Of a stretch of 64,000 nt of DNA, positions 3,973-57,105 are shown one piece after another. A model generated the notes under the pieces. It worked only from the letters and a program-made list of their open reading frames with translations, was not told the DNA's origin and made no database searches. The first letter of the stretch is position 1; each line of letters starts with the position of its first letter. Origin of the DNA: Paragordius varius (taxonomy: Eukaryota > Animalia > Nematomorpha); NCBI GenBank assembly GCA_964247055.1, contig OZ176056.1, positions 7,564,001-7,628,000 on the forward strand, read 5' to 3'. The translations under genes and the position numbers were made by a program.

Positions 3973-4157
3973 CATGAGTAAGTATAAATTTCTAGAAAGT
4001 TATTAATTATTGCCAAATAGCATATGCAGCAAACTATCATTGGCTTATAATAGTAAAAAAATAAAAAAATAATTATAATCCAATACTGCCCTTTGTTGTA
4101 TATGCTATTTGGCAAAAATTAATAATTTTCTATCAATGTATACTTATACTCATACTA
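3970..4157. mobile_element. MITE family C copy inserted at the edge of a TA run
   Basis: Long imperfect TIRs (CAGCATGAGTAAGTATA ... TATACTTATACTCATACTA); homologous to 12507-12700. Confidence 0.7.
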
Positions 4158-4170
4158 TATATATAAGGGA

Positions 4171-7100
4171 TTATTTTAACAATTTGTTTGAAAATATAAT
4201 AAGTTTACTGGTTAATCCTTGACGCGGGCTTTGACGATTTTTTCGGGCTAGATTGAGCAAACATAAACTTTTAATGAAAGAGATGCAACATTGTTTACGA
4301 TTTGGGGCATGAATACATACCAACAAGATACCCATGCATAACAGTATAAAACCAAATGCTAAACGATGAAAAAAAATATTAGATTTAGAATTCCATTTTT
4401 AAAATTTTAGAATTATTTTAATGAATATCTTAATTTTATCCGTGTTAATAATTAATTTAAAAGTTTTAAATTAATTTTTTTTAGAATTTAGTTATTAAAA
4501 GCGGGTAAATTGTCGGTTCTTTTAGAGTTATATTCTCAAAATGTTATGTGAAAATAAAATTATCGAATTATCTTATGAATGAGCAGGTTTTAATCTAAAA
4601 TAAATCTAGTTTATTGTTAAAAACTCTATTTAATAAGATAAGTTAGGTTTTGGACGCAGATATATTTGGATGGAGTTTATTTACTTAGTTAATCACTTAA
4701 AATTTATAATGTAGCCTGTCCTAATTTTTTGTGGCGAAAATTAGCGATATCTTTTCAATTAATTACTTAAAATTGATAAGAAATATTTTTTCTTAATCAA
4801 TACTTTTTTTTCCAAAAATATAATGTGCAATCCTTGGGTTGAACTTTTTAATTTTTAAACATTTTAGATTCCAATATCTCTATTCAATTTTTAAATTAAT
4901 TATTTTTTCAAATGATCTTTTTATATAGTTTTGACAGCTTTTTCTTCATTAGTTAGCCTCTAAAGTCACACAAGATGTGATGTCTTAACTTATCTTTTAA
5001 TAAAATTATATGTATACATCCATATAAATTATTTATAAGATCTTTTTAGTAGTATATAGATAAAAAATGTCAACTATAATACAGTTATCTAATTTTTTTA
5101 CAAAACAAAGTTACATCCAATGACACATTACTTAGGTAATTAATTTGTTTCAAATACATGTATATAACATTTTGATTAATTAAATTATATGTACAAGGTT
5201 TGTGGTGTTTTTTGGTTATCAAAAGATTTTTTGTGGAGATTAAACTCTTGGTAAAACTAATTTTTATAATTAAAAAAAACACAAAAAGGATGTTTAAAAA
5301 ATTTATATATTTAAAAATTGGACTCCGGACAAAACGTAAAAATATAAATACAGATATTTTTTCAAGAGACAACATAATTTTTTAAACTTGAATTAATATA
5401 AAATATAATCCATCGTCTTAAACGTAAAATATTAATTAGAGATGTAAGTTGGTAAATTACATTATTTATAATATAAAATTGTAAAAATTCTTTATATAAA
5501 TAAGGTTTAAAAAGTATGGCGTTCTTTAGGGAAAAAAACATTTGTTTTTATGTATTTACGTTTTGTCCGTATAATTTCATTTTTTATTGTATGTATAAAA
5601 ATATTTAATTCAAATACATTTTATTCAAAATTACCTGCAAAACACATTGATATGATATGGAAAATATTTATATCGTGGACTGAAAAATGTTTAGATTGAA
5701 TCTTTTGTGGGACAACTTTGCTAGCAGAAAACTGTTGTTCAGGTCGGGTAGTTCCAGAATTTCTAAGTTCCCCCAACATGCCAAACGTAATAGATAGAAT
5801 GAGTTGAACGAAAGCAATTGAAAGCAAGATTATAGCATAATGGGTAGCAGCTACTCTTTTGTATGTTAAGTCTTTTGGGTAATGGCCCAAATCCTATACA
5901 GAGGGAGTAGCGAAAAAAAAATTAATTTGCAAAAAAATGAAACAGAGTTATTAAAAAATAGTTTTTAACAATGTCCATTAAACACTTAATGCCAAAGCTT
6001 AATGAATAACAAAAAAACGTATTTACAAGAACTTAATAAACCCTATTTTCAATAAACATAAAAAATTAATTTTGAAGATTAAACTTAACCATTAATAAAG
6101 CTCAAAAGCTATAAAAATAGGCTCATTGATTATAATGTATCACCCATTTTATTGCATAATGGTTTGAAATACAGAAAATATTTCATTTCAATTATAGGGT
6201 GAAACAGCGGAACGCAATTTGTCATCCCAAAGATTTAAATGGAAAAATTATTAGATTGAAAATTTCAAATGTCTTTATGAAACTACTGCTAAAATTATAC
6301 TTAAATTTCTGATCTAGCTATGATTTAAACCAGGGGTGCATACCATTTTTCAGTCGAAAGCAACATTTTCATATCTAAACCGAACTTAAAATGTTGCTTT
6401 AGATTGAAAAGTGGTATAAATACAAATTTCACAATTTTAATATGTTAAATTGATATTAACGAGTTTTCTAAATAATTTTTTCCAATTGACAACGAGTCGG
6501 AAAATATTAGTAGGATCAATAGTAATTTGTGTGTATTAAATATTTTGTCTCTCTGGGTTTTTTGAGTCAAAAATGCGGTCGGTCCGAGAAACTTTTTACG
6601 TTGGACACCTAAATTAAACAAAAACATAATCCGATTTTCAATTTTTAATGACGAGGCCCTTTTTTAGGGTAGGGAAAACTTACGATCTGATGCAAAAAGC
6701 GGTTGTTTCTCATCATTTTTGCAGATAAAAATTGGTAACTTGACTTTAATATAAATTTTAAGGCATGTTACGCTTTGAAACACTATACCAATTTTAGTGG
6801 TTACCCCTGGTTTCGATAATGGAATGAAGATTTTAAACATACTTTTACGGCAAAAATATTACATTATTGCTTAGAAATCAATTATAAGAGTGATTTATTT
6901 TTATTTGAAATATGGAAATATAAATAGGATTCCCCATATTTTTTGGAACAAATATTGTATTTTCTAAAACCACACTAAATTAATATTTCACATTAGTATT
7001 GGTACAGAGTTAAATTAAAGTTTAAAAAATTTGAAAAATAATATAAAAACCCAGATAATTAGATAAATAAAAGTATAGAAATTCTAAAAAATAAATAAAT

Positions 7101-19493: not shown

Positions 19494-20628
19494 TAATAAA
19501 TTAAAATAATTTGAAAGAATCGATTTGTAGGATACATACGCTTAAAATTACCAAAGAATAGACATCTTTTTTATGGATGTGCGTTTGTGAAACCTAAAAG
19601 TTAAATACAATATAAAAGATATATACATTATTTTATCTTATATGATAAGGGCCGTGGTCTATTTAGGTTTTGTTAAATAAATATATATGATAATATATGG
19701 CTAACTCTTTAATATGTTTTCTAGTTTATTAGTTGAGGCCTTTTTTAAAAAATATATGGAAAAAATGGTCTACAGACTCGTTCTCAACTCTTACTTTGTT
19801 CACTCCACACCAAATCCAAAAAATTTTGCCTGCTCCCATCCTCTAAAAAAACAAAGATTAAAATGCAAAATTATATTATAATATCATTTAAATCATAATA
19901 ATCAATATAAGATCCTAATTGTTAAAATATTTATTCCAATCGGGGACAAATTTTGATAAATGACAGCTGAGATTTTTATTAACAGGCTGTGAATAAGTAT
20001 CACACAAAATACGTCGATGCAAAAGATATCAGTATACGTAAAGCAAATTGAGTTAATAATGGATACCGATGCGCGCTTTAATATTTTTCAATTTATTAAG
20101 ATTAACAAAGTGATTTTTAATATTTAAATCATATTTAAAACTTTATGCCCTTTGCCATACTTCCAAAAAAGTTGAATAAACCAATTATCAATTAATAGTA
20201 AACATTATGCTCGTTTCTTCAAATTTTTCATATCTCACCCTAGATTTTTCTAGGCTCTCGTTATGGATCGTTTTCCCCTTTTTGGGATTTACAGAGAACT
20301 AATAAATTCATAAAAGTTGACATAAAAAAATATCTAAGATCTAATACCCAATGCGGATTTCCAACTATTTCGTTGAACAAACTTTAATACGTCTGCTTAG
20401 GATGAAAATGATTTATAATAAACACAAAAAAATTTGAGTATTATAAATATTTCAGTAAGTCATCGAATCATATATATTAACTTGGCATAATGTACGATGC
20501 GGATCTCTGTGCGAGTGGAAGTTTTATAAAGAAGTTAATGAAAATATAATAAAATTTATTGAATTTTTTTTATCACAAATAATTTTAAAAAAACTTGCTG
20601 GTCACAGTCTGATATTTATGAATGGACG

Positions 20629-20660
<32 letters not shown>

Positions 20661-20820
20661 CTATATTTGCGGACCTTACACTAAATTTTAGATCTAACAT
20701 AATAAAAATAATTTTAATTAAAATATATTTTATTTCTAATTTAAATATTTAATAAAATACCAGGAATTCATATTTAATGGAAATTAAAGATTTGTACAAA
20801 TTTATTATATTATTTATAGG

Positions 20821-21373
20821 TTATAGCCAATTTTCTGTTTCATTTTGTATATTTTTTATCGTTACTGTTGTTTGATTTCCAGATTTTAATGCTTTATCTA
20901 ACATCTATATAATATAAATTAAATGGGTAAACCATTAATTTTAATAAAGGAGGTATCTCGATTGTATCCTTATAATTGGGAACAAAAGGAGAAGCGTCTT
21001 TTGAAGGTACATACAATTTTTCCAAATGTTTTGGAATTAAAAACCAATCCGGTATGAATGCCTTTGAGATTTTTTGATTAGATTCAATTTTATCTAAAAC
21101 GGAAAAATAAAAAAACTTTTTACTTCGATAGCACACATCCGCAATAACTTTACCGTATTTCAAATCCTAGATGATTATTAAACTTATTACCTTATCAAGT
21201 AGATTTGGGGCAGCATATTTAATAAAAATAAATGATTTTTCCGGGTATTTTTGCCAAGAAAAACGTCCAAACATTCGATCAACTCCAAAATTTTTTAAAT
21301 TAACCAAAATTTCAAACAAAGATTTCCCCTTATATTTGTATAGCGGTTCTCCAATCTTTTTTATTCGAGGCAT
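20821..21373 (-). CDS. MRPS34: Mitochondrial ribosomal protein S34 (mS34), 156 aa; exons 21373-21191, 21166-21124, 21093-20933, 20904-20821
   Basis: KGKSLFEILVNLKNFGV, KYPEKSF, DWFLIPKH and IPPLLKLM match recalled mS34 motifs. A complete ORF ending ...ETENWL* needs three GT-AG introns of 24, 30 and 28 nt. Confidence 0.85.
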
Positions 21374-21423
21374 GGAATTTTTTTACATGTGCTTTTTAAA
21401 ACATATGCGGCATATTTTAGGGT

Positions 21424-24400
21424 ATGATGAATCTCAATACTCGCAACAAAGAGGATAATATTTTAAACAAAATCGCTACCCTAGGTCGCAGACGTAAGCT
21501 TAAAGAAGGTATTTTTATTCAAAATTATCCTTTTAATTTAGCCCAGGAAGTTGAAAATTTATTGCAACAAGGTTATGTTGCAATTGACCAGCCTAAAACA
21601 CAGTTTGACGCCCTTAATCCTTCCGAGTTTATATTAGGTACAATTCTTATTTGAGTTTTTTTTTAATTTTTTGTTTTGGAAAACTTTTTTTTTATTAAAA
21701 TTAGAAAATAATGAAGAACGATGGATGATAGATCCTAAATCTAGAATGGAACCGAATGTGCAATATCTACTAAAAGTATTATGGATTTTATATAATTTTT
21801 TTAAGATTATGTTCTCATGGTATTTTGTTGAAATATATTCTAAAAGTTATCACATTTAATAAATTTATATATATATTAATCAAAACTTTAAATTTATAGC
21901 TTTATAATTTTTTTTAGAAACTATTTCAAAAATTCATAATAAAAATTTCTTATGCATTAAAAATAATTATTATTATTTCTCCCCGATAATATAATTATGC
22001 AATCTAGTATTTCCCATTATAAAAAAATAGATTGTAAACTTAAAGAAAGGTATTTTTACAATTTTTTATATTTCAAAAATGAATATCACAGAACTTTTTT
22101 AGTAATGTAAATAATTACCTAAAACATATAATTTTAATTTTAAATCAAAAAATATTTTTTAAAAGACAACGTGTCCATACTTTTTCAAACCTCAATTTTT
22201 ATATGAATAACCAATAGTTTTGGGTTTCAAAATTAGGAATATAAATGTGAATTGGTTTAATTTAAACAAAATATACTACTTGTCATATAGTTATATTAAA
22301 TTATTAAACATTCACATTTCTTTATGATAATGATATAGTATTTAAATGTTTTATTTTTAATATTTTTAGGTCCTTATCGATTGGATAAATGATACATTGT
22401 ATAAAACGGAAAGAATTTTAGTCAAGGATTTAGAGGAGGATTTATACGATGGCCAAATACTAGGAAAATTATATGGTATGATGGTAAAATAATATAGAAT
22501 GCGTATTTCTAACAATTACAGTAAAATATTGAATCATACAGATACGAATTGTAAAAAACAAATCAAAACGAGACAAATATTCTATTTGAAAAGACAACCG
22601 TACTTTTTTATTCTACATAAATTATTCAATTTCTATATATATATTTGATTGAATTACCAAGACACATTTCAATTTCTTTTATCTGCAATCTAAAATGATA
22701 AAAGTTATATTAAAAATAAGTGTAAGATATAGATATTCTTTCTAAAAATATATTTGTGGTTATATTTTAACCGGTTAATTTTAATATTATAGTAATTACA
22801 TATACAATCAATTTTGCAATTTCAAATGCCGTTTAAGAATTCTCTCTTATTTGGTTTTAATGTGTTTTCTTTTAAAATTCATGCAATTTTTTTTCAAAAT
22901 TATTTCTATATTCCATCAAAAGCGATGTCTTTTTTTTAAAAATTAGTTTTTTGTCAACTTTCCATGTTTTAATATGAATCAATTAAAGACAAGTATTTTT
23001 TTTATAAAAAGACAACCATGCTTTTTCAAACCTTAAATTTTTCCATACAAATTATTTAATTACAATTGTAAAATATATAATAATTGTATTACCAATTTTC
23101 ATCTACATTTTATACTTACCAGTTTAAAACAATCAGAGTTAATGAAAAAATCAAAAATTAAAAATTATGGTTGGCTTTTTAAAAATATGTTTGTCTATAT
23201 ATATTTCTACGTTCTGTCCGTATAATTTCAATTTTTATTGGATAAATCTTTGGGTATTTTTACGTTTTGTTTTAATATAATTTTAAGTTAGTCCGTATAA
23301 TTTCAATTTTTACTGGATTGGTGGTTACTTTTAGAATTTTTACATTTATCTGTTTACAATTTTAATTAATTTTTTTATTCTTATAAATAATAACCCAGAA
23401 AACTTAACTCAAACTAAACTTGAAACGATTGAACTTACCCAATCAGAAGAAAGGCAAAGGCAAAAACTACAAATTGTAACGGAAAAAATTGATCAGCTCC
23501 TTTCCATGCCCTATGAACATAACGAATGGACACCTGATGGTACTTTTTGCTTTTTCAATTAATTTTGTTTCATTAAACTTTTTTTGAACTTATTTGTGGT
23601 TTTAAGGTATTTTTTGCATTTTAAAATAAAGTTTTGTTAGTTTTAACATTTTCTACGATTTTTTAATATCATTATCAGAAATTTTATAAAAATAATAATT
23701 GTTCAAACCTTAAAAAACATTAAAAGTTTATACTAGACTAGTAATTTATTGCATTCCATTTATTTACAAATATAATTTTTGTGCTTATATTTTTATTATA
23801 TTAAAGGGCATTATAATCATTTTACATTTAAATTTCAGTATTTTTTTAGTATTTAAAAAGATATACAAATTATTAAAATTTTTTTTATTTTAAATTATGC
23901 TTAAATAGAAAAACAACAAATTTTTGTAATTTTTATACTTTAACTAGCGTAAATCTCGTGCTGCTACGCAGTCGAAGTCCTTCGGACTTCTGGGGGGGGG
24001 GGTATTTGAAAAAAAGGGACAAAAAAATGATCTACATATGTGGATTATTTCGAAACATTATTTACTAACTATGATCTCATAGGAATTTTAAAACGGTGCA
24101 CTCATACTAATATATTGTTTACTTGGGCGAAAGATTCAAAAAATTATTTTTGTGGACTTTGTTTTTTGAAAAAATGGCATTTCACGGGGGGAGCGGGTAA
24201 AAAGAGGGCCTAAATTAAAAAAGCGAGCCGACTATGTTCGGCGCAATCGAAAATAAGTAAACAAAAATCATATTTGATATTGAATGGTCCAACACGTTCT
24301 CCAGGAAATTGTATCAAAGACACCATTTTTGTGGACTTATGTTTTTTAAAAAAAACCGTTTTTTACACGGGGTGGGCCCGAACTGGGGGCCTATTTCACA

Positions 24401-25327
24401 AAAAGGGCGAAGCTATTGTCGGGGCATTCATTAATGATTATATTTTTTCGATAATTGGATTTGAATGGATCTACCGGTTTTCCGGAAACAGATCACAAAG
24501 CCACCTTTTTCCAATAGATAAATGATATAAACAATTATATTTTTTAGCAATCTTGAGTAAAGATCTCATCTCAATATGCCGTATCTGTTCTGCGCTTGCC
24601 TTATTTTTTTCTGGACAATCAAATGATAATATTTTACAAAAACTCTTGGCAAACCCACACGCTAAAAAACTGGAAAATGCTGACAATTATAATACTAATC
24701 AAAATTTTGATGTGTATGAAAATGTTTTAGGAGCCAATAAAGTATGTATTTATTGTAGTTTTTAATTTAAAGTAAAAAATGTAATTATACGGACAAAATG
24801 TAACTAATTTAAAAGAAAAACCATACTTTTAAAACCTTATTGTAAAATATAGGATTGATTGTGTTAGTAATATAAATAATTATATATATCTATCTTTTTT
24901 TTAACATTGCTATAAACAATGAGATTTTTAAAATAATCAACATATAAAAAGTATGGTTGTCTTTTAGAAAATAATATGTGTCTTTAAATTTTTAGGTTTT
25001 CTCCGTATAATTGCAATTTTAACTGTAAATTAATAGATAATATAAATATAAAAGAATTCATTAATCATAAAAAATACAACTTAATAAATTTACACTAAAA
25101 TTTTTTTTCTTATATATATATATATATATAATGGAAAATTCACCCTAATTATGTGTTTTTGGGATAACATAATTCCTCATCAATATAAATATAACTTTAT
25201 GGTATAATTTATTATTTTTTCATTATTATATTTATTTTAAACTTAAAAAAATAAAAAAATATAAGTAATATTTAATCTTAAAGAAACACATAATTCAGTT
25301 TAGGGTGAATTTGAAGTGTAAATGGTA

Positions 25328-25375
<48 letters not shown>

Positions 25376-27042
25376 AAAAAATTAAGTAATATTTAATCTT
25401 AAAGAAACACATAATTTAGTTTGGAGTGAATTTGAATTGACCTTATTGCCATTTTATTTAATCGCTCATTTTTTTCAAGTTTCAAGATGGAAAAAACAGT
25501 TCCAGCATTATTCAATCACAACAGGCTGCTGTTGCATTATTGAACAATTCCTATCTCATTACGACATTGCATGTTAGGGCGCGTGGGGATGGCACCTTAG
25601 CTATAAAACGGAGTCAAACTAATCTTATATCCGTTCCACCCGCCCTCTCTACAACGTTTGAGTTGGATAATTTGCATTTACTCGGTCTGAATTCAAGGTC
25701 ATTCCCTTGTAAATTTGCTAGGGATCAACACAGTGAATACGGTTATAACTGTAATACTGCTTCTACTTATACTTCTACTAAAGATGCATTTGATACCTTG
25801 TTTGCTCATGCTCCTGAAAAATTGGATATCGTGAGAAAGGTAGTGGTTGGTTGGTTTTTTTACTCTAGTAAAATTGAAAAATTTTTGAGCAGAAATAAAA
25901 GATTATTTTTATTGTTTCTACTTTATTTTGGCATATTTTAGACACATTTTCTACATTATAATATTTTGTTGTATTCTTACAAATGTTGGTCGTTAATTAC
26001 AAAAATTAGGTGTTTAAATATAATGATTTTCTAAGGGTTTTTTGGTTATTTTAAATACTCAACCTAACTCAATGCATATCCCAACTTGATATTATTTAAA
26101 ATTTAAAAAAATCATCATAGAATAAAGGTTATATTTTATGATTAATTTGCTAATGTTAGAACTTTTAAGATATCTATATGTATATTTTCAATTTTTAGTC
26201 ATTGTTGACTTTTGCCAGAAAGCATTTATCTGCATTCAATATTGATGTTTATGATTTAGAAGAACAGGTAATATTTTTGGATATACTATCGAAATTATTG
26301 AATTATTTTTATAAATAAGTTAAAATTATTGATATTTTATAATTTATACAATAAATATAACGGTTAAACATCAAATTAATTAGCTTTCAAAAGGCAGTAA
26401 TTAAAAAATGTGTCAAATTATAAAAAGAATAAAAATTTTCAATTTATTAACTGTTTTATAACATATGGTAATTTGGGTTATGGCATTAACATTATTGTTG
26501 ACTTTGTATAGCAAGTATTTTAGTTTTTATGTTAGAATTTTTGCTTTTTTTAACCTTGCTTATTTTGGATTAGATTTGATCATTTGCTCTATCTATTTCC
26601 GATTTGAAAAATAAAACGATGGATGTTAATTCTAATTTAAATATATAATAAAATTGTTAAACATTTTTCTGTATATATATATGTTTAGTTTAATGATGGA
26701 TGTCTATTTATCCTATTGTTGAGTCAATTGGAAAATGTATTTATCCCCCTGTATTTATATCATCAAGAAGTCCAAACTCACGACGATAAGGTTTTATAAT
26801 AAAATAAAAAAATTTGCAGCAAAATTTTACAGTAAAATGTTAAAATCATAGTATAACCTTTAATTTGTTCATAAAAGATTGTCAATTATTCAATTATATA
26901 TCTTATCTTTTTATTTTCCATTATAAATATAAAGTTATGTTTGGAAAAATACTTTTTATTCTAAATATCCCCAAGTTCATTATTTAACTATTTTTTCTAT
27001 ATTTATATATTATTTAAAGCTTATTTTTTTCATAATTTGGAG

Positions 27043-41200: not shown

Positions 41201-44200
41201 AAAAAAATCTACTTATAATATTAATAATAATTTGTAGATAAAAAAGCAAAATTAACTTTTAAATATACTATTTACTTATTATTACAAAATCCTTGGTTTA
41301 GTTTTATTTAATTATATGAATAAAACATAAAAATTATTCTTAATTAACAACCCAAAAATACCGTAGTATTTGAATATTAATCAAACATAAAAAAAACCAA
41401 TTTTCTTTCCACCTCATTATCATAATTTTACCTTGATAGTTCGATCACCACTGGCAGAAACAATGTATTTCGCATCAAAATCTACAACATTCACAGCAGC
41501 CCGATGTCCAACAAGGACGCGTCTAAGGGAAATATCTTTGGATGATCGCATATCCCAAACAGCTATAGAACGGTCCTATGAAAATTATGAATTATAAAAA
41601 AAATGATTTAAAGTTTGACAAAAACCTTAAAAAGTTACTATTTTCGAAAAAAAATTGTAATGTCATAAAAAGTACGGTAAAAATAAAATTTATATGGATT
41701 CATATGAAAAATTAGGGACAATTTTTTATAAAAAAAATATAATCCTATAATTATTACAGTGATAATTAAAATAAGAGTAAAAAATGTAATTATAACAACA
41801 ACAGCAAGATTAATAGTTTTGAATTTTTTAAAAAGATTTTATATTTGTGACAATATTATAAGTTGTAAATTGTAATCTATTTCTTAATCATATATATATA
41901 AGGCTCAAAAACTCGGTTATTTTCCAAAAAATATTTCTATTTAATATTTACGCTTTGTCTTTTAATAATTTATTATGTAATTGAAACCAAAATCGAAAAT
42001 AGAACTTGTCTAATCTATAAAAATGTTTTATAAAATTAAAATAATTAAATTAAATTTGAGTTTTCGTAAAATTTATCTAAGAGAATATTAAATAAATGAG
42101 AACACAATGACTAAAAAATAAAATAAAAAAAACTGAATAAAAATTTTTCATTTAAGATACAATCTCAAATTTTTTATCTATTGTTAAAGTAAGTTAATAT
42201 GTACAAAAACAGATTTTGTTTTTTTACCGCAAAATACTTTAAAAAATGTTAATAAAGAAAAGTAAAAATCACTCAATTTTTGATAACAAAAAAGGATGTT
42301 TTAAAAAATAAAATTTACCTTTGAACAGGTAACCATAACACCCTCATCAAAACGTAAATGAAGTACGGCTTCACAATGATGTATTAGCGTATTTAACATT
42401 TCACCATTGTTCACATCCCATATTCTATTATCAAGGGGGAAAAAAATTAAATTTACAATAAAAATTTTATAAATATAATAAATTTTTGGATTTACAGTTC
42501 TTAGGTTTTTTAAAAAAAAGGTAGTATAATGAACACACCCGTAAAGATAAATGGGTTAAAGTATGCTATTTTTTTTTATAAGAGAGTGCAATTTAAAAGT
42601 ATATCGATATGTTGAAACTAAAAAAGCTCATTTTTAATATAAGCGAAAATAAAAGGTTAATAATTATCATTTAATATTTAAAATACAATTCTTGGGCACA
42701 GTTATTTCAATGCTAAAATATTTAATTTTTCTCTTTATAGCATCTATGAGATTAGGTTTAATTCAAGAGAGGGGGGGGATTATGAAAAAAAATCTTTTTA
42801 CATTATTAAAATATATATATATATAAATACTTAAATTGCGGTAATTGATTAACATATAATCAAATATGCGAATTATAAAAATATTTTAAGCCCTAGAAGA
42901 AAATATAAATTATAAATTTTTACATATTGATGAGTAAAACCAATATTAAATCATATTATACCTGACAGTCGCATCACTACTCCCTGTAACAATTATATTT
43001 TCATCATATTGCAAACAAAGGACAGAACCGGTATGTCCAGTTAAAACCTTTAAACATTCCAGTGTTTTATAATCCCAAATCTATCAATATGGGATAAAAA
43101 ATTGTATAAAATAAAATCTTTAATAGCCATAATATTAATTATACTCTTAATTAACAAAATAAAGCTAATTTTAAAATTAAAAAGCTAATTTACATGTAAT
43201 AAATATCACAATTTTACGCTTCGCCATAATCACAATCATAGATAGGCGTTAAATTAAGGATGATTCTGAAAAAATGAACAGCAAAGCTTAATGCCTTGTC
43301 TTTATCATACGATATTAAAAATTCTACTGTAAAATAAATGTCATATATGAAAAACTAAAAAAAACTACATTCCAATGTTTTTTAATAAAATCAGATGATT
43401 CAAAACTTGAAATAAATCCAAAATCCGCAATATTTAACCTTGATAGTATTATCCCGGAGACCACTGACAATTTTGGTGTCATCATACTGGAGACAATAGA
43501 CTCCTTTGCTATTTTCACTTCGACACTTTATACGTCGTAGGGCGTGTTGGCCCGCCTTCCAATGCGTTTGGAGGGTCGAAATATCATGCAGAACTGACCC
43601 GTACAATCGCTTATAAAACCAGGTAAGGAGTCTTACATTATTGGCTCTTGTTTCATTATTATTATTACTACAAAGATCTGTTTCAGAATCAAAGTTATTA
43701 ACGTTAAAATTATGTGGGGACGACGATATTGTTTCAAAACAATTGCCATGTTTAACGTTACTACTACTACTACTACTTCCAAGTTGTATAAAAGTTTTTA
43801 CATCATCTAAGATAAGAGCGGACACCGAGGGGGAATTAATCTTGGATACGGTTGATGATTCACCTAAAGATAATATACATAAAACAGATGGGTATTATCT
43901 GTAAAAAATAGATTTAATTTTATATAAATTAATATGAATATTCGAACAAAAAAAATATTAGATAACACATAAGAATTATATATATACCATTTACAGTTCA
44001 AATTCACCCTTGAACAATTCAAATTCACCCTTGAACAATTCAAATTCATTTTGAACAATTCAAATTCACCCTAAAAATAAATTATGCCTTTTCGAACTAA
44101 TATAACTCATTATTGATATGAAATATATGTTTATGGTATAGTTTATTATTTTTTCAGTATTATTTTAATTTAAAACAAAATTTTTATTTTTTAAAAAATA

Positions 44201-47200
44201 TATAAAATATAGGTATTTCTTTATCTTAAAAAACATATAATTTATTTAAGGGTGAATTTGAATTAAGGGTGAATTCGAATTGTTCAAGGGTGAATTTGAA
44301 TTGTTTAAGGGTAAAATGAATTGTAAATGGTATATGATAAATTTATAATCATAAAAATAATATATTTTATTCAAAACATTTAAATTTTGTTCATTATATA
44401 CAAACGTTTTTCATAAATCATTATAACACTTGTTAATTTTAGTTATAGGTAACAGTAAAGAGAGTAAATAAAAAAATTCATTCATATTATTTATAATAAA
44501 AACCGTCATTTACACCCATTTTATGAAATTTATTATTTATGTTAAAAATCTAAAAATCAGATGTGAATCTATTAAAATATATCATTATTAACACTTTCTT
44601 GAATTATAAGTTAACTTTATAAAATTAAACATTTATACATATTTATATTCATTTATAATTAATTTTTACTGCTTAAATATTACTTTTTTTCTCCAAAAAA
44701 ACTTTAAATTAAATTTTATAAAGCTTAAAATTAAATTAAATTGAAAACCATTTTGTCCATTATCTCCACTGCAATCTGGTAAGGGTTTAGATATAAAATT
44801 ATTATTGTTGTGTTTAGTTTCTGTGGTTTGGGGTTTTTGTTGATTATTAGGCGTAAATAATAAAATCTCCATCAGTTTGATAAAGTTGGCATCTAAGATC
44901 AATGCATCACCTAAGCCAAAAAGAAATAAGTAAGATAATCAATAAATTTATTAAAAATTAGTAATTTTTATCATTTTAACTTGAAAATTGTACGAAAAAT
45001 TCGCTAAAATCGAGAAAGTGTCCATAATAAGTAAGCATTTATTAATAATTAAAAAATTTTTTTTTTGGTGAAGTAGAGTTAATATGAATAAAAATTGAAG
45101 AGTTTTAAACTAAATAAAAGTCATGTCAGAGTTTTGAGATAATAAAAATGATATATTATTTATATTTTGTTTTACATTATAAGTTGCCATTAATATTTAA
45201 AATTTAAGTTCTATTTTACTAATCATGCATCATTATGAAACAAACGGACAAAGTTTTTCTTACTTAAAGTCAAAAAAAGTAACTTTTCATTAAACAGCTA
45301 CCCAAAAGTATAAACTCATAAAACGCATGAAAAAACAAACATATTTACAATAAAAAGTGCATAAAAAAACTTTTATCAATCATTTAAATTCTCGTCATTC
45401 ATTTATCACCTGATTATCCATTTCATAAAAAATAAAAACATTTTCAAAATCCACACTCTACTGAAATAATTAAAACATGAATAATACCATTTTTAACAAT
45501 AGAAGCGGGAGTTTTTGAATTTAAGGATGGTAAATTTTGTTGGTTATTAGTCCAAAATTTTATAACGGAAGTTTCGCATTGGTGTTCGGTTTTATTCTGT
45601 TGTTCTTCGGTATTCATGAAATTATTCGTATTTTGAGAATTAGTTTGTTGTAATAAAAAACTCATCATTAACGTGTGAAAAGAAGCATTATTGTTATTTT
45701 GAATCATTGTTGTTGATAAGGCTAAGGGTGATTGAAGAATAGATTCACCACGTCCACTCATTACATAAAATTTAAGTAGCAAGGTTTGAAAACAAGCCAA
45801 ACTTTGGGATAAATTGTGTGCTTTATACAGGTATTGTTTCCTAAAACAAGGTAAAAATTCATATAAAATTAAAAATTGTAAGGTTCATAATATTTTTTAT
45901 TCTAGTGGTATCATTATATGAATAAAATGTAAGGGGTAATATGTCTAGAATTCCCATAAACCTATATTTTGCGACTCAACATTGTTACATTAAGTTTAAA
46001 ATCCATTAATAATTAAAACGATTAAGTAAAAAAATATTTATCAGTAGATAAATGTCCACATTTTACATTTCTCTACAAATATTTAGAAAATTTAAATGTT
46101 TAAAGTGCTTTAAATTTTCACAAAACAAAAGTTTTGTTTTTATTGTGCAAAAAAACATTTAGACCACGTTTAACATTCAAAGATATCCATTATAAAATCA
46201 CTTGGAGTATAAACTAAAAGAGAAAAATAGACAAAATAATGCTTCTTAAACAGAAACCATGCTTGCTCTGCGTTTTGCAAGTTTAATCTTTTGTTGAAGC
46301 AGTTTTTAAACTAAATAAAAAGCCACCAACTTTATTGCCTCTTAAAGCAGTGGTTCCCAAAAAAAGGGGGGGGGGGCGAAAAATTCGGAGAATTTAATTA
46401 AAAATAAAACTCTAAAACAAACTAAAAGATTTCAAATGCGAATTATCAAAATTTGTCACACCGATATGGAAAAGATATTTCAAAAAAGGGCAAATATAAG
46501 AATCTCATTGATTGGAATTTTTATATCATTACACTGGACAACAAATTTTTCTGCCATTCGAGTTTTTTGCATTTTCTGATATTTAGTATCATTTTAACAG
46601 TAAATCTGAAATAAAAATTATAACTCGATGGAAGAATTTTGTATAATTTGATTTTTTATGCGCCCTCTTTATCAAAATTTTACTAAAAAATGTTTTTCTT
46701 TAAAAATATACAAGTAATGCCCATTTGTAATATATCATTCGAAAGAGTAATAAAAACTCTATAAAATGCATTCTAATATGTATTACATCGACAGTTAATA
46801 TTGGACACAAAGAGCGACAAACGCGCGAAGCGAGAGCATTTTTTTTAATTATTATATTTTTAAAACTAATGGATGAAAATAGCTCAAACTTTGTTTAGAT
46901 GGTGAATGTCCAAAAAAGATAACACAAGAAAATTTTTTTGATTAAAACATTTTTTATTGCTTTTATGTCACTCAAAACAGCCATTTTTAAGTTTTTTGTT
47001 TTTTAAAAATTACCATCTCATCAATATTAATTTATTTTCTTTACAAGGCTGATAATCTCGAAATTTTAAAGATAAAAACAAAGTTTAAGGTATTTTTGAT
47101 CATTTATAGCCATCATGTAATAAATTTACAGTTGTAACTATGCATTTTAGTATGGTAAAATATGATAATAATAATTTTTATTAAAAAAGAAAACCAAAAG

Positions 47201-49399
47201 CTTTTTCAAGCATTTTTTTAAATTAAATACTAATATAACCCTAATAATTATATTGAAATAATTTATATAATTTTTAAATTAGTTTGTCTGTGAAGATTCT
47301 TAACTTATTTAAGGATAGAATTCGACCATTTTACTCCAAAAAACTTTTACATTCGATTGATTTAAATAACATATTACCATTTAAAAAATGCAGTTTTTTG
47401 CGCTCTTTCGAATGATATAAAATACATGGCTTCATATCTAAAACTTTAAATTTTCGAAATTTCGAATTTAATGTTAAATCGGGGCCAAAAATTATCGATA
47501 AACTCTAATATAAAAAGATTCATGCATGCTAGACCAATTTTCTTTTCAGATATACTAATTATGTACTTTAATAAAATAAATTTTAAATTTACAAGAATGG
47601 CAGTTAAAAAAAGTTAAAATTTGTTGTTTCTAGTGTTATAATATATTTTACATATTTATCTTGGATTTTTTTACAGGAGGGTGGAGCGGAAGAATTAATA
47701 TTTTGAGGCGTGAACAAAAAAAGGTTGGGAACCACTGCCTTAAAAGGTTAAAAAAAGTCAAAAAAAAAGCGTAAAAATATAAATGTGAAACCATGCTCGG
47801 CGTTTCGCAAGCCCAGCCCAAAGCGAATCTTTTTCAACTTTCCGTTCAATGAGTTTTTTCCAAAGGGCGCCTTGCGCTATAACCCTATTCCATTCCTTAC
47901 AAACGGCTTCACAGTGGGCTAAGGATTGGGCATCTAGGTAGGCCAAAACTTTTTCCGCTAAATGATCCAGGTAAAACTCTAAAAGTGCGTGCATAAAAGA
48001 AATATATATTATATATATATCAAGGGTGAAAAAATATTGGTTTTACTAATAGTTTATATATATATACCATTGACATTTCAAATTTACCCTTAAACAATGC
48101 ATATTTACTTTTGAACAATCCCAATCACCCTAAAATATATTATGCGTTTTTTAAGGTTAAAAATTACGAACATGTTATAGGAAAAATGAAATTTTCATAA
48201 AATTAATATAATATTGAAAAAATAATAAATTATGCCATAAGAATATATTCCATATCAATGATGAGTTATATTAGCCCGACAAAAACACATAATTTATTTC
48301 AAGGGGGGGGGGGGGTCCACTATATATCCATAGTGTTAAAAAACTATGCATAATATAATAATATCCAAGGTCATTTATTCTATACATACTGTATATGCAT
48401 GCTGACACAACGAACGAAAAAAAGATGACAAATTAATTTGCTTGTTATTTTATATTTAACAATAAAACAAGCGCATTGTAAAGTAAGACATGGAGATTCT
48501 CAAGGTTGCACAATATATATATAGATATTTTATTTTTCAGGAAATCTTAAAAGCCTTATAACTGGCTTTGAATTTTAAACTCCTTGAAAAATGGTTAAAT
48601 ATAAATTTTTTTGGCAATAAGCCTACAAATTAAGGTTTAACATCAGCCCCGAAAATGTGGTATAAGGCAATCTTCAAATTTTAGTAAAATAGCTCAGGTA
48701 TAAATAACATTTGTTAGTCAAGTTATCAAAAAACCTATTATAGATAAAAGAATCATCACTGAAATTACAAATTAAACATGTGTGATAACTTAAACAAGCT
48801 ATAAATATTCCATCTAAAAAACTAAACTTTTAAATTATCTTAAAAGCAAAAAAATTACTAGGTAGCAAGGATAAAAAATCTCTTTGAAGCATAGGTTTAA
48901 GGAAGGAATCGATAAGACCGTGTTGGAAATGGCACATTTTATGTAATAAATGTTGCACGAAATCAACTTGATCAGCTTCGGACCAAGTGTCAAAAAGATT
49001 AAGACATGCAGATCGTTCTGATGCATAGGCTGCATTATTCCCAAACGAATTAGAGTTTTGTGACATAATTTGATTGTTTTGGGAATTGGGTGAATACTGT
49101 AAATTAATATGATTATTGGGATAAGATTTGAAAGCGATTGATGATGTGGGTACGTGATCAGCAGATAAATCTAAATTTGGTAAATATAAACGAGCTTTTT
49201 TGTCGCTATTTGAATTAAGCTGATTAATATTATTATCATTGTTTGATGTTATAGTTTGGTTTGTTGAAGAATTTTGCGAGGTTTCTTCTAAATGCATCAT
49301 ATTATCTGGGATAGAAACTGTATCAGTCATAGTATCATCCATATTGTAAATGTTTTCTTTGGTTGGCGTATTTAAATCGTTTTCGTTTTTAAGATCCAT
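37011..49399 (-). CDS. slmb/BTRC: beta-TrCP/Slimb F-box/WD40 protein, ~903 aa; exons 49399-48859, 47978-47792, 45840-45488, 44910-44749, 43863-43439, 43080-42962, 42424-42319, 41575-41432, 40581-40463, 39085-38975, 38397-38319, 37711-37588, 37252-37011
   Basis: It has the D-domain ([26 protein letters not shown]), the F-box ([22 protein letters not shown]) and seven WD40 repeats closely matching recalled beta-TrCP ([64 protein letters not shown]). Splice phases are consistent. The last exon and the three insertion-bearing exons are less certain. Confidence 0.93.
37798..38090. mobile_element. MITE family A, intact reference copy (further copies near 13437, 22519-23315, 24770, 33660, 34645, 38566, 54520)
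   Basis: TA|CAGTAAAAATTAAAATTATACGGACAA ... TTGTCCGTATAATTTAAATATTTCTG|TA. Confidence 0.85.
39207..39506. mobile_element. MITE family A copy
   Basis: TA|CAATAAAAATTTGAATTATACGGAC ... GTCCGTATAATTTCAGTTTTTACTG|TA. Confidence 0.8.
43987..44330. mobile_element. MITE family B, best copy; TIRs built from 21-bp sub-repeats (further copies near 14179, 25136-25440, 39720, 48064, 61011)
   Basis: TA|CCATTTACAGTTCAAATTCACCC, then repeats of TGAACAATTCAAATTCACCCT, mirrored at the right end by ...GAATTGTAAATGG|TA. Confidence 0.85.
46348..47737. mobile_element. Non-autonomous hAT (Charlie/Buster-type) element in a beta-TrCP intron
   Basis: Perfect 13-bp TIRs CAGTGGTTCCCAA / TTGGGAACCACTG. Flanks TCTTAAAG and CCTTAAAA form a 6/8 TSD with a central TA. 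No transposase ORF. Confidence 0.8.
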
Positions 49400-49678
49400 T
49401 TCTAAAAAATATAAATCAAAATCTACCTGTGTGGACAGTTGTTTTTTAATTATGGCAAATATTCACTAGGAAAGTTTGTCTGCAAAATATTGGATCAACT
49501 TATTGAAAAATATGAATATTCATACAATCAATATAAAAGATATGACTATTTAATTTTTGGGTAAGTGTCCCAGAGATATATTTAAATTTTTTAAAACGTA
49601 AGGTCAACTTATTGGAAAATATGATATTCATAAAATCAATATAAAAGATATGTCTATATTATTTTTGAATTAGCTTAA

Positions 49679-54862: not shown

Positions 54863-57105
54863 CAATGGCGTACCGAGCATTTGCGGCTCCCAGGGAATAA
54901 AACTCTCTGGCGTCCCCTCCTCTTTTTGAAAGCCAATAAAACAATTTAGTAAAAAAATAAAAACGTCAAATGCTTCATAAATATTAATTTTAGAATCTTG
55001 CAATCTATGTTTAACCCTGTCGATTCTTCTAAGTATTTGATGCCAGAAAAAAATTAATATTAAAAACTTGGAATTTAAAAAACCCTGAGGTAAAACGGAT
55101 GCTCTACTTCTTGGTTCGCTAGTATTTGAAGTATTTTTACTTAAATTTTCTAATAACTCTAACAAATCATCTATTCCCTCAACAATGGCATTAACTGCTT
55201 GATTTCTAAAACTCCCTCGGGTTTCAGACTCACGCCGAACAGTGATTTAAGTTTATATTTTAATAGGTCTCATCTAATAGTTGAACGTGAAAGATATTTT
55301 CAATTATTCTGAAACAGGTCAATACAATAACATCTAGCTTTACTACCGTGACTCCCACTAAATTCAAAAAATGATTGTCACAGTTGACAAATTTACTCTT
55401 TTATTATTTTCCAGAATTGTTAAACGTCTGAAATGTGAGTTACATTATCACAGCTTTGAGATAACTGATAATTATCCATATTAAGATTTTTATTGCATTT
55501 TCAATTGACATTGCATCTTTGTTGAATAACTGAAAAAAAACCAAAAAGGATTCTTTTATGACGACTTTCTGTTTCTCATAATCATAAAACGCATAACCGA
55601 TAATTTAAAAATTTATTTTCGGTGGGCTAAATCTGGCTTTGAATCAAATATAAGTCCATAATATTTACTTTTTTATGTCATCGATCATTAGCTTTAACTC
55701 TTGAAACTAAAAGATGTATGAACTCGTTTTAAATTTTGGGTGAAACACAGGATTAAGTGTTAGGAGATTCAATGTTTTTTTTCATGTGTTCTCCCATTAT
55801 TGGGTCAAACTGAGCTACAAGTAAAGATATTCAAGATTTGGTGCTGAGTCATCTAGATACATTAAACTTTCACGATGTCCTTAAGGGAGACTTTGGATGA
55901 TTAAAAATTTCATGCAGGCCAATATTCGATGTAAAATATTTAGCCATCGATCCTTTTCCGATTGTATGTGAGCCTCTAGAGAACCAATTGGTGTTTTATT
56001 TTCAATCTTCTTTCTGCTCTTTCCAAGTAGTAAATGCTTTCCGATGATTGAGGCTATTTTCATGATGGGTTATATCTTTTTTCCTGCATATATTAAAACC
56101 ATGTGCAGTTATAAAAGATGATGGTAAAGAGTTAGATTGATCAAAAAGTAGGCAACAATAACAATACGAAGATCTGTTCTTTGGTGAATATAAAAGCCAA
56201 GACCTCTCAACTTCGAATCCCTTTTTTACTGACACGTCAAAAAAACCAAGATTGGGGCATTGAACAATGAATTTTTGTTTTAAAGAGATTGCATTTATTT
56301 TAAAATCCTTGCGATCCACGAATAATCATTTCTGTCCGAAATTGATTAGATATTACGGGAACATTATAAGTAAATTCTAAAAAGGCGACATCATTAAACT
56401 CTCCAGGTATAGCGCTTGGAAATACTAATATTTGTAATGTTCATTTCTATTTGGATCCATAACTAGGGTTTCAGTACACTTTTTTCAATGTTATGGTCAG
56501 ATATTTTCGTTTAAGATTTCATACTCATTCTTATTTTATTTGTTTTATTCTCTTCCTGGATTTTTCGTTTCCTATTTGCGTAACCACTGAGTTTAGGCAT
56601 TGATATCTGATTAAAATGAAAGTAATTATAAAAATTACAAGGCTATATTAATAATAAAAACCTACCTTGTTAGAGATAGAATGATCTTGGGGATTTAAAT
56701 AAATAAAATTGGGTTCTAAAATTGAATATGATTAAATTAAAAATGCTATAAATATAAGAGGTAGTTTTTATACAGAGGGACAAGGACGTTAAAATAATTT
56801 AATTAAAGGCAATAAAAGAATTAACAATATGTGCGTATAAAGAAACGTTTTTAAGCAAAAAAAATTTGCACATATTGAGGGGAATACCTACATGATGTTG
56901 TTTTTTGCATAATGTTTGCTCTTGTACTTATATAATTTTCATATTATATAAGGGATTATTAAGTAATTTGTTGAAAAATTTAACTTGAAAGTTATTATTA
57001 TATTTGCATTTAGATATGATTTAAAAAATATCCTTTAGGAGCCCCTAAATAACGGCGCCTGGGGCATGATGCACCCCCTTGACAACACCCCTCAGTACGT
57101 TATTG
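54863..57105 (-). mobile_element. hAT transposon with TTF-zinc-finger/DUF4371 (ZMYM1-like) transposase, internally deleted
   Basis: TIRs CAATGGCGTACCGAG and CAATAACGTACTGAG match 12/15; TSD CATGAAGA and CATCAGGA match 6/8. ORF pieces read RSWLLYSP..YCYCCLLF..GF..HENS..H..AF..WK, EKDRWLNILHRI and FWHQILRRIDRV..RLQ. Confidence 0.85.

What the first reader, a model, noticed from the sequence alone, without database searches (positions are those of the whole stretch)
20821..21373. MRPS34 needs three ultra-short introns of 24, 30 and 28 nt in a genome that otherwise has kb-scale introns
Seen: minus-strand GT-AG segments 21190-21167 (GTAATAAGTTTAATAATCATCTAG, 24 nt), 21123-21094 (GTAAAAAGTTTTTTTATTTTTCCGTTTTAG, 30 nt) and 20932-20905 (GTTTACCCATTTAATTTATATTATATAG, 28 nt). 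The 24-nt segment ends in an in-frame TAG. Retaining the 28-nt segment changes frame and truncates the protein. Removing all three gives a gap-free 156-aa mS34 (AAPNLLDK-DLKYGK versus recalled human VRPDYTAQNLDHGK; YRNKIESNQKI versus FKGKTESEAREI; PPLLKLMMLDK versus PPLLRAMIIAE). Known: most animal introns exceed roughly 40-60 nt; introns of this size are known mainly from ciliates, nucleomorphs and very compact animal genomes such as dicyemids. The other annotated introns in this window run from 67 to ~1950 nt. Inference: this lineage may splice a distinct micro-intron class alongside long introns, implying an unusual spliceosome.
Basis: partly seen in the sequence, partly recalled or inferred. 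Interest (0 to 1): 0.88.

Follow-up and report, generated by a model that had tools for sequence, protein, structure and literature searches.

The report
Three tiny introns in hairworm-like mS34
A small mitochondrial-ribosome gene (mS34) in this AT-rich, horsehair-worm-like animal genome is almost certainly split by three real introns of only 24, 30 and 28 bases. That size is published for just two other animal groups, but I could not get RNA data to show the cutting directly.

Summary
Removing them gives a 156-aa mS34.

Four independent lines say they are introns:
- **Orthologous positions.** The NCBI-annotated Gordionus (Nematomorpha) ortholog has introns in the same codons and phases, of 40, 40/52 and 1466 nt. 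Its exons 1-3 have identical lengths (183/43/161 nt).
- **Best model.** Of 7,625 possible GT-AG models, this one scores highest against an mS34 profile built without the window's protein.
- **Purifying selection.** Allelic variants in DNA runs are 9 synonymous to 4 non-synonymous in the spliced frame (pN/pS about 0.11).
- **Indel.** One allele has a 1-nt insertion inside the 30-nt segment, which would shift the frame if that segment were coding.

Long introns (67 nt to about 1.9 kb) sit in the neighbouring parvin and beta-TrCP genes.

Not shown: splicing in RNA. Every run that held the locus was DNA. The "unusual spliceosome" inference is untested.

The scan has already noted 20-33-nt introns many times on other DNA of this same genome, so this is one more well-anchored case. 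Published work (MBE 2026) reports animal introns under 30 bp only in myxobolid myxozoans and Dicyema.

The parts
21191..21373 (-). mS34 exon 1 (ATG at 21373; codons 1-61; 183 nt)
   Evidence: Pfam PF16053 E 6.5e-9. Same 183-nt length as Gordionus exon 1, L001 4001-4183.
21167..21190 (-). Intron 1: 24 nt, GTAA...CTAG, phase 0, ends in an in-frame TAG
   Evidence: Same codon and phase as the Gordionus 40-nt intron (L001 4184-4223) and as the single 372-nt intron of P0014's gene (L005). Present in independent DNA contigs.
21124..21166 (-). mS34 exon 2: a 43-nt micro-exon between two micro-introns
   Evidence: The Gordionus exon 2 is also 43 nt (L001 4224-4266).
21094..21123 (-). Intron 2: 30 nt, GTAA...TTAG, phase 1, in frame and stop-free. 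It is 31 nt in one allele.
   Evidence: Orthologous to the Gordionus 40/52-nt intron (L001 4267-4306 or 4267-4318). Retention lowers the family-HMM score from 138.5 to 129.7 bits and lengthens a 26-28-aa span to 36 aa. Run X3 carries a 1-nt insertion after 21108.
20933..21093 (-). mS34 exon 3 (161 nt)
   Evidence: Pfam PF16053 E 1.7e-6. Same 161-nt length as Gordionus isoform X1 exon 3 (L001 4307-4467). Its three SNPs are all synonymous.
20905..20932 (-). Intron 3: 28 nt, GTTT...ATAG, phase 0. Retention shifts the frame.
   Evidence: Orthologous to the Gordionus 1466-nt intron (L001 4468-5933). The span across the junction is 13 aa, as in 52 of 60 family members.
20821..20904 (-). mS34 exon 4 with the TAA stop (20823-20821)
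   Evidence: An AATAAA motif lies about 20 nt downstream (read).
21424..25860 (+). Context: the divergently transcribed parvin gene. Its ATG is 50 nt from the mS34 ATG. It has a 33-nt segment (21509-21541), a 67-nt intron (21638-21704) and gaps of about 590-1900 nt between exons.
   Evidence: ORFs. Pfam CH domain on 22370-22489. Alpha-parvin PDB match on 25780-25854. Sequence.

Best explanation
The locus is a functional, single-copy-looking nuclear gene for mitoribosomal protein mS34 in a nematomorph-like animal. Three ordinary-type (GT-AG, presumably U2-dependent) spliceosomal introns interrupt it, and they have shrunk to 24, 30 and 28 nt. They are the orthologs of introns that measure 40, 40/52 and 1466 nt in the hairworm Gordionus. 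Each is presumably recognised by intron definition across its whole length and removed from the pre-mRNA, which joins exons of 183, 43, 161 and 84 nt into a 156-aa reading frame.

Shown here: the sequence, the homology-anchored junctions, positional orthology with annotated introns, coding constraint in the spliced frame, presence of the segments in independent DNA data, and long introns in the neighbouring genes.

Inferred: actual removal from RNA, use of the major spliceosome, and branch-point use. Candidate branch adenosines lie 11-14 nt upstream of the 3' AG. In intron 2, apart from the A run of the 5' splice site (positions 3-7) and the terminal AG, the only A is at position 16.
For: 1. 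Coordinates, frames and the 156-aa product were reproduced, with Pfam MRP-S34 on exons 1 and 3.
2. The closest protein in 5.8 billion is Gordionus sp. m RMFG-2023 mS34-like, at 48% identity over 143 aa against 39% or less for the other full-length hits (those covering over 100 aa). Its gene (L001) has introns after codon 61 (phase 0), in codon 76 (phase 1) and after the PPLLKL[L/M] motif (phase 0). These are exactly the three window positions. Exons 1-3 are 183, 43 and 161 nt in both species.
3. A third animal gene (P0014, L005) has its only intron (372 nt) in the same alignment column as intron 1.
4. I built an HMM from 61 mS34 proteins without the window's sequence.
5. Span lengths across junctions 2 and 3 equal the family mode. 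Retaining intron 2 gives 36 aa where 57 of 60 relatives have 26-28 and the maximum is 29.
6. Allelic contigs in DNA runs X3 and X4 differ at 13 CDS positions: 9 synonymous and 4 non-synonymous, against 94 synonymous and 374 non-synonymous sites (pN/pS about 0.11, binomial P = 1.8e-4). The three SNPs downstream of the in-frame TAG are all synonymous.
7. X3 has a 1-nt insertion inside the 30-nt segment, which is harmless in an intron and a frameshift if coding.
8. Contigs from three runs of the same species label, representing two samples (X1, X3, X4), contain the segments. A contig of X5, a run labelled as another organism, spans intron 3. So the segments are not assembly errors.
Against: No RNA evidence was obtained. 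The runs holding the locus (X1, X3, X4, X5) have even depth over intergenic DNA and contigs colinear with the genome, so they are DNA. The runs labelled RNA? held next to none of the sampled words. No transcript-derived protein of this species turned up in the two protein searches, which used Gordionus mS34 and a 90-aa piece of the window gene as queries. Intron 2 is in frame and stop-free in the reference allele, so partial retention cannot be excluded. The indel rests on one contig in a T7/T8 homopolymer. Branch points and splice-site consensus come from only three or four examples. The SNP test uses assembler contigs, which drop rare variants.
Confidence: 0.88

Rival explanations
1. Only segments 1 and 3 are obligatory introns. 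The 30-nt segment (in frame, stop-free) is retained in some or all mRNAs and encodes a 10-aa loop insertion.
For: Retention keeps an open 166-aa frame that still scores 129.7 bits against the family HMM. Nonsense-mediated decay could not detect its retention.
Against: Gordionus has an annotated intron in exactly this codon and phase. Retention costs 8.8 bits and gives a 36-aa span where the family maximum is 29. One allele carries a 1-nt insertion there, which would destroy the frame.
Confidence: 0.08
2. The locus is a decaying or unexpressed pseudogene. The three segments are small insertions that happen to have GT-AG ends.
For: No expression data were obtained. No protein from this locus appeared in the searches of the public protein collections.
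Against: pN/pS is about 0.11 in the spliced frame, including downstream of the TAG. All three segments coincide exactly with annotated introns of the ortholog. There is no other frame disruption. Both alleles keep all the splice dinucleotides.
Confidence: 0.03
3. The segments are assembly or sequencing artefacts, or are removed at the DNA level (ciliate-IES-like programmed elimination) rather than from RNA.
For: The sizes (24-30 nt) resemble short ciliate IESs, and some ecdysozoans eliminate DNA (my own knowledge).
Against: Contigs of X1 (20822-21765), X4 (20942-21399), X3 (20779-21084 and 21132-21476) and X5 (20857-21084) contain the segments. No DNA joint skips them (tables 5 and 8). The boundaries are GT/AG at orthologous intron sites, not TA/TA.
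Confidence: 0.01

Closest known systems
Ultra-short introns of myxobolid myxozoans (Henneguya salminicola, median 27 bp; Thelohanellus and Myxobolus, 22 bp): Hadjez et al., Mol Biol Evol 2026, PMC13644364
   Same: Animal GT-AG introns of 30 nt or less at conserved intron positions between conserved exons. The organisms are parasitic and AT-rich. The introns were validated there partly by the same positional-conservation argument.
   Different: In myxobolids the median intron is that short and the genomes are compact (75 Mb). Here the micro-introns sit next to introns of 67 nt to about 1.9 kb. This is an ecdysozoan, not a cnidarian. The paper surveyed 51 genomes and its main text does not mention Nematomorpha. 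Splicing there was supported by long RNA reads; here it was not.
Dicyema japonicum introns (the only non-myxozoan animal with similarly short introns, according to PMC13644364)
   Same: Spliceosomal introns under 30 nt in a bilaterian parasite, with reduced splice-site motifs (GTa...AG) reported.
   Different: That is a compact genome in which short introns dominate, and a different phylum. The three introns here begin GTAA, GTAA and GTTT and all end in TAG, which is too few to define a motif.
Orthologous introns of the Gordionus sp. m RMFG-2023 mS34 gene (XP_065312729/30; GCA_954871325.2)
   Same: Identical positions and phases, identical lengths of exons 1-3, and similar base composition (24.7% versus 26.2% GC).
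   Different: The lengths are 40, 40/52 (alternative 3' site, isoforms X1 and X2) and 1466 nt, against 24, 30 and 28 nt. The window's species has pushed short introns below the roughly 40-nt size seen in Gordionus and lacks the long third intron.
Ciliate micro-introns (Paramecium about 20-33 nt; Stentor 15-16 nt). Stentor is cited in PMC13644364; the Paramecium figures are from my own knowledge.
   Same: Similar length range, GTA...TAG-like ends and an AT-rich genome. The 24-nt segment (a multiple of 3) carries an in-frame stop, as expected if translation-coupled surveillance polices retention.
   Different: Ciliates have only short introns, a gene-dense genome and reassigned stop codons. This window is gene-sparse under either code, uses TAA as the stop here, and has kb-scale introns.

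Membership tests
mS34 / MRP-S34 (Pfam PF16053) | Match to the family profile above the curated cut-off | tested here: met
   Exon 1 scores 36.3 bits and exon 3 scores 28.4 bits against a cut-off of 24.5. The spliced protein scores 138.5 bits against an HMM of 61 family members.
mS34 / MRP-S34 (Pfam PF16053) | End-to-end colinearity with recognised mS34 proteins | tested here: met
   It aligns over residues 1-148 to profile positions 1-150 with single-residue gaps only. The best hit is named mS34-like by NCBI.
mS34 / MRP-S34 (Pfam PF16053) | Physical component of the mitochondrial small ribosomal subunit | not testable with these tools
   Only weak single-sequence matches to mammalian mS34 chains of solved mitoribosomes (E 0.06-0.3).
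Spliceosomal GT-AG intron | GT at the 5' end and AG at the 3' end; removal restores one open frame | tested here: met
Spliceosomal GT-AG intron | Same position and phase as an annotated intron in an ortholog | tested here: met
   All three match Gordionus L001. Intron 1 also matches L005.
Spliceosomal GT-AG intron | Segment is non-coding (tolerates frame-breaking change; exons are under codon-level constraint) | tested here: met
   A 1-nt insertion allele in intron 2, and 9 synonymous to 4 non-synonymous exon SNPs. The indel rests on one contig.
Spliceosomal GT-AG intron | Absent from mature mRNA | tested here: inconclusive
   All four runs laid were DNA. No RNA-labelled holder was listed. Spliced-junction strings were absent from metagenome contigs.
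Spliceosomal GT-AG intron | Usable branch-point adenosine | tested here: inconclusive
   Read from the sequence only. TTTAAT lies at positions 9-14 of intron 1 and 10-15 of intron 3. Intron 2 has a single mid-intron A at position 16. No lariat data.
Animal ultra-short intron class (Myxobolidae / Dicyema type, PMC13644364) | Length of about 30 nt or less | tested here: met
   24 and 28 nt. Intron 2 is 30 or 31 nt, which is borderline.
Animal ultra-short intron class (Myxobolidae / Dicyema type, PMC13644364) | Short introns are the genome's typical intron (median 30 nt or less; compact genome) | tested here: not met
   In this window parvin and beta-TrCP have introns of 67 nt to about 1.9 kb, and few long ORFs exist. 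The genome-wide median was not measurable here.
Animal ultra-short intron class (Myxobolidae / Dicyema type, PMC13644364) | Reduced splice-site motifs (GTa ... AG only) | tested here: inconclusive
   With n = 3 (plus the parvin 33-nt segment): the 5' ends are GTAA, GTAA, GTTT and GTAT, and all four 3' ends are TAG.
Pseudogene | Relaxed constraint or frame disruptions not explained by introns | tested here: not met
   pN/pS is about 0.11, and there is no disruption outside the three orthologous intron sites.

The most novel reading that the evidence does not exclude
Horsehair worms, or at least this lineage of them, carry a discrete population of 20-33-nt spliceosomal introns made by shrinking ancestral introns. 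In this gene the changes relative to a relative are 40 to 24, 40/52 to 30, and a site holding 1466 nt to 28. The surrounding genome still keeps kilobase introns and many repeats. That would be a third independent origin of introns under 30 nt in animals and the first outside a compact genome. It would imply that extreme intron shortening does not need genome-wide compaction, and that standard annotation (minimum intron of about 30-40 nt) systematically breaks genes in these genomes.
Probability: 0.7. Interest if true: 0.75.

Novelty: new member of a known kind. Interest (0 to 1): 0.6.

Why it matters
A September 2026 survey of 51 animal genomes found introns under 30 bp only in myxobolid myxozoans and Dicyema. 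It treated them as a feature of extreme parasitic genome reduction (PMC13644364).

A nematomorph-like genome with 24-30-nt introns beside kilobase introns would separate "how short can an animal intron be" from "how compact is the genome". It would also give a bilaterian with close relatives (Gordionus, about 40-nt short introns) in which the shrinking can be traced site by site.

In practice, gene finders with a minimum intron length above about 30 nt will truncate or miss genes such as this mS34. No protein from this locus turned up in the protein searches, which used Gordionus mS34 and a 90-aa piece of the window gene as queries. That could inflate the apparent gene loss reported for hairworms.

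This locus adds something to the scan's earlier cases from the same genome: allele-based evidence (selection in the spliced frame, and an indel in an intron), and a gene in which every intron is micro, including one whose ortholog is 1.5 kb.

Tried and rejected
1. **RNA evidence.** The look-up of sequencing runs (kind rna) listed X1-X5 as holders and X6-X10 (RNA?) with 0.00 of the sampled words. A repeat with the library word 'RNA' listed none. The single read-laying run on X1, X3, X4 and X5 showed DNA-like flat depth and colinear contigs, and no joint at any of the three segments.
2. **Spliced-junction strings.** Exact strings for junctions 1 and 3 found nothing in metagenome contigs, as expected.
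3. **Protein searches.**
   - The 90-aa stop-free piece found only Gordionus.
   - Gordionus as query found two more Logan proteins.
   - The exhaustive representative search gave 127 relatives, none from this species.
4. **Locus look-up.** The look-up of encoding contigs failed for isoform X2 but worked for X1.
5. **PDB.** A single-sequence search gave only weak mS34 matches, so I did not use it for junction mapping.
6. **Ciliate origin.** I considered a ciliate genome with a reassigned code. I rejected it because the window is gene-sparse under both codes and the relatives are animal.
7. **Exon-2 skipping.** Treating the 97-nt stretch as one intron fails, because 97 is not a multiple of 3 and the model does not rank.
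8. **Constraint on intron sequence.** I considered using the lack of substitutions in the 82 intronic nt as evidence of constraint. I did not rely on it, because Logan contigs represent alleles unevenly.
9. **Rfam.** A scan of the window found no snRNA or any other RNA family.
10. **Not attempted.** I did not type the 156-aa spliced protein into exact-match look-ups, because no reference exists for a spliced product.

Full report
**What is in the sequence**

On the minus strand, an ATG at 21373 opens a frame that runs 61 codons to ...NLLDK. It then meets a 24-nt GT...AG segment (21190-21167) whose last three bases are an in-frame TAG. A 43-nt stretch follows. Next comes a 30-nt GT...AG segment (21123-21094) that is in frame and stop-free, then 161 nt, then a 28-nt GT...AG segment (20932-20905) whose retention shifts the frame and stops 12 codons later. 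The last 84 nt end in TAA. Removing them yields 471 nt, or 156 aa. Pfam MRP-S34 (PF16053) matches exon 1 (profile 1-37) and exon 3 (profile 67-115), both above the curated cut-off. The window is 26.2% G+C and has few long ORFs under either the standard or a ciliate code. It is gene-sparse animal-type DNA, not a ciliate genome.

**Whose gene it resembles**

The only database protein in the admissible length range that matched the 90-aa stop-free piece was "small ribosomal subunit protein mS34-like" of Gordionus sp. m RMFG-2023. This is a horsehair worm: Nematomorpha, Gordioida.
- Its cluster holds isoform X2 (157 aa) and isoform X1 (161 aa).
- The spliced window protein is 48% identical to it over 143 residues. 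It is at most 39% identical to the other full-length relatives, meaning those that align over more than 100 aa, among the 127 found by an exhaustive HMMER search. Short fragments reach higher percentages over 35-60 aa.
- Together with the shared gene structure described below and the similar base composition (24.7% G+C in the Gordionus locus), this makes a nematomorph or close relative the likely source. That agrees with earlier notes of this scan on the same genome.

**Positional orthology of the introns**

I fetched the Gordionus locus (L001, GCA_954871325.2) and mapped isoform X1 onto it. The two genes compare as follows.

| Feature | Gordionus (L001) | Length in Gordionus | Length in window |
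|---|---|---|---|
| Exon 1 | 4001-4183 | 183 nt | 183 nt |
| Intron 1 | 4184-4223 | 40 nt | 24 nt |
| Exon 2 | 4224-4266 | 43 nt | 43 nt |
| Intron 2 | 4267-4306 (X1), or to 4318 (X2, alternative 3' site) | 40 or 52 nt | 30 nt |
| Exon 3 | 4307-4467 | 161 nt | 161 nt |
| Intron 3 | 4468-5933 | 1466 nt | 28 nt |
| Exon 4 | 5934-6032 | 99 nt | 84 nt |

The three junctions fall in the same alignment columns and the same phases (0, 1, 0). A third animal gene (P0014, GCA_964204645.2, locus L005) has a single 372-nt phase-0 intron in the same column as intron 1. So the three segments are the shrunken counterparts of ordinary introns.

**Is this the best gene model?**

I built a profile from 61 mS34 proteins (Gordionus plus 60 full-length relatives) without the window's sequence. 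I then scored every distinct product obtainable from the ATG by removing 0-4 non-overlapping GT...AG segments of 15-120 nt. That gave 7,625 models.
The model that retains the 30-nt segment scored 129.7 bits.
- The spliced protein aligns to the profile over positions 1-150 with single-residue gaps only.
- The span from the conserved GKV motif to PDW is 26 residues. It is 26-28 in 57 of 60 relatives, with a maximum of 29. Retention would make it 36.
- The span across junction 3 is 13 residues, as in 52 of 60 relatives.
- The span across junction 1 is 14 residues, against a family mode of 13-14.

That test is not met at junctions 2 and 3. It is moot at junction 1, because that segment carries a stop codon.

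**Allelic evidence**

Depth is flat across intergenic sequence and the contigs are colinear with the genome. They include contigs that span all three segments, which excludes assembly artefacts and DNA-level excision.

Contigs of X3 and X4 carry an alternative haplotype with 13 differences inside the CDS. In the spliced frame, 9 are synonymous and 4 are non-synonymous (two of those in one codon). The gene has 94 synonymous and 374 non-synonymous sites. That gives pN/pS of about 0.11, and the excess of synonymous changes has a binomial P of 1.8e-4. The three SNPs in exon 3 lie downstream of the in-frame TAG and are all third-position synonymous changes. So that part is read as protein in this frame.

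None of the listed substitutions falls in the three segments. X3 carries a 1-nt insertion after 21108 (a T7 run becomes T8 on the gene strand) inside the 30-nt segment. The insertion would shift the frame if the segment were translated, but it is harmless in an intron.

Caveats: these are assembler contigs, and the indel rests on one contig in a homopolymer.

**Long introns next door**

The mS34 ATG (21373, minus strand) and the ATG of a parvin gene (21424, plus strand) are 50 nt apart.
- Parvin has a 33-nt in-frame GT...AG segment (21509-21541) and a 67-nt intron (21638-21704).
- Beyond those, gaps of about 590, 900 and 1900 nt separate its exons. The exons are anchored by a Pfam CH-domain hit (22370-22489) and an alpha-parvin PDB match (about 25780-25854).
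- A beta-TrCP gene on the minus strand (about 41400-49400) has recognisable F-box and WD40 exons separated by about 320-1950 nt.

**Mechanism**

The simplest reading is conventional splicing by intron definition.
- The 5' ends are AAG|GTAATAAG, GAA|GTAAAAAG and ATG|GTTTACCC. All three 3' ends are TAG, as is the parvin 33-mer's.
- Candidate branch adenosines lie 11-14 nt upstream of the AG. TTTAAT occurs at positions 9-14 of intron 1 and 10-15 of intron 3.
- In intron 2, apart from the A run of the 5' splice site (positions 3-7) and the terminal AG, the only A is at position 16. If an A is used for branching, the 5'ss-to-branch distance is 16 nt and the branch-to-3'ss distance is 14 nt.

All of this is inference from three sequences.

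Nothing here indicates an unusual spliceosome. The window holds no snRNA gene. The published analysis of myxozoan introns of 22-27 bp found conserved U2 snRNA and U2AF and concluded that splicing is conventional and U2-dependent (PMC13644364).

**What is known**

Hadjez et al. (Mol Biol Evol, September 2026) state that introns under about 30 bp were considered absent from animals. Among 51 genomes they report them only in myxobolid myxozoans and Dicyema japonicum. Nematomorpha is not mentioned in the main text. My searches for hairworm or Nematomorpha intron papers found nothing on this.

The scan itself has noted 20-33-nt introns in this same genome many times on other DNA, generally without RNA proof. 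This finding is therefore a further, well-anchored instance rather than a first sighting.

What it adds:
- Exact three-for-three orthology with an NCBI-annotated hairworm gene.
- Identical exon lengths in the two species.
- Allele-based selection and indel evidence.
- A case in which a micro-intron corresponds to a 1.5-kb intron in a relative.

**What is missing**

No RNA data show the junctions. Holders of the locus were all DNA, RNA-labelled runs of the species held next to none of it, and junction strings were absent from metagenome contigs. A genome-wide length distribution and a spliceosome inventory are outside what one window allows.

**Verdict**

My confidence that all three segments are spliced introns is about 0.88. 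It is higher for the 24- and 28-nt segments and somewhat lower for obligatory removal of the 30-nt one.

Noticed in passing
window 21373-21424: mS34 (minus strand) and parvin (plus strand) are head to head, with only 50 nt between their start codons. A TTTTAG acceptor-like motif sits 3 nt before the parvin ATG. This could mean a very short shared promoter, very short 5' UTRs, or a 5'-UTR or trans-splice acceptor.
   Followed up: no
window 21509-21541 (+): Parvin has a 33-nt GT...TAG segment that is in frame and stop-free (phase 1). Removing it gives ...RRRKLKEAQEVENLL..., which fits my recollection of the human alpha-parvin N-terminus better than retaining it. A 67-nt intron follows at 21638-21704.
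   Followed up: partly
window 20942-21476: DNA runs X3 and X4 carry a second haplotype about 2.4% different from the window across the mS34 gene. X4 is from the same sample as X1, which matches the window exactly. So the sequenced sample appears heterozygous or pooled.
   Followed up: partly
window 20000-22000 (run X5): A run labelled as a different organism (organism B) holds low-depth contigs that are identical or nearly identical to the window (for example 21447-21741 with 0 differences). It may be the host, a contaminant, or a differently labelled sample of the same worm.
   Followed up: no
L001 4267-4318: Gordionus mS34 isoforms X1 and X2 differ by alternative 3' splice sites 12 nt apart (intron of 40 or 52 nt), at the intron orthologous to the window's 30-nt intron.
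   Followed up: yes
window 20617-20671 and 21655-21693: A (TA)n microsatellite downstream of mS34 and a T-rich low-complexity run inside the parvin 67-nt intron. Contigs of the public runs break at both places.
   Followed up: no
window 41400-49400 (-): A beta-TrCP-like gene with D-domain, F-box and WD40 exons separated by about 320-1950 nt. Long low-complexity ORFs (45884-45447 and 43894-43403) lie between the F-box and the first WD40 exon.
   Followed up: partly
window 56005-56319 (-): This ORF has a sub-threshold match to zf-C17orf113 (24.3 bits against a cut-off of 29.5). It may be a transposon-derived zinc-finger remnant.
   Followed up: no
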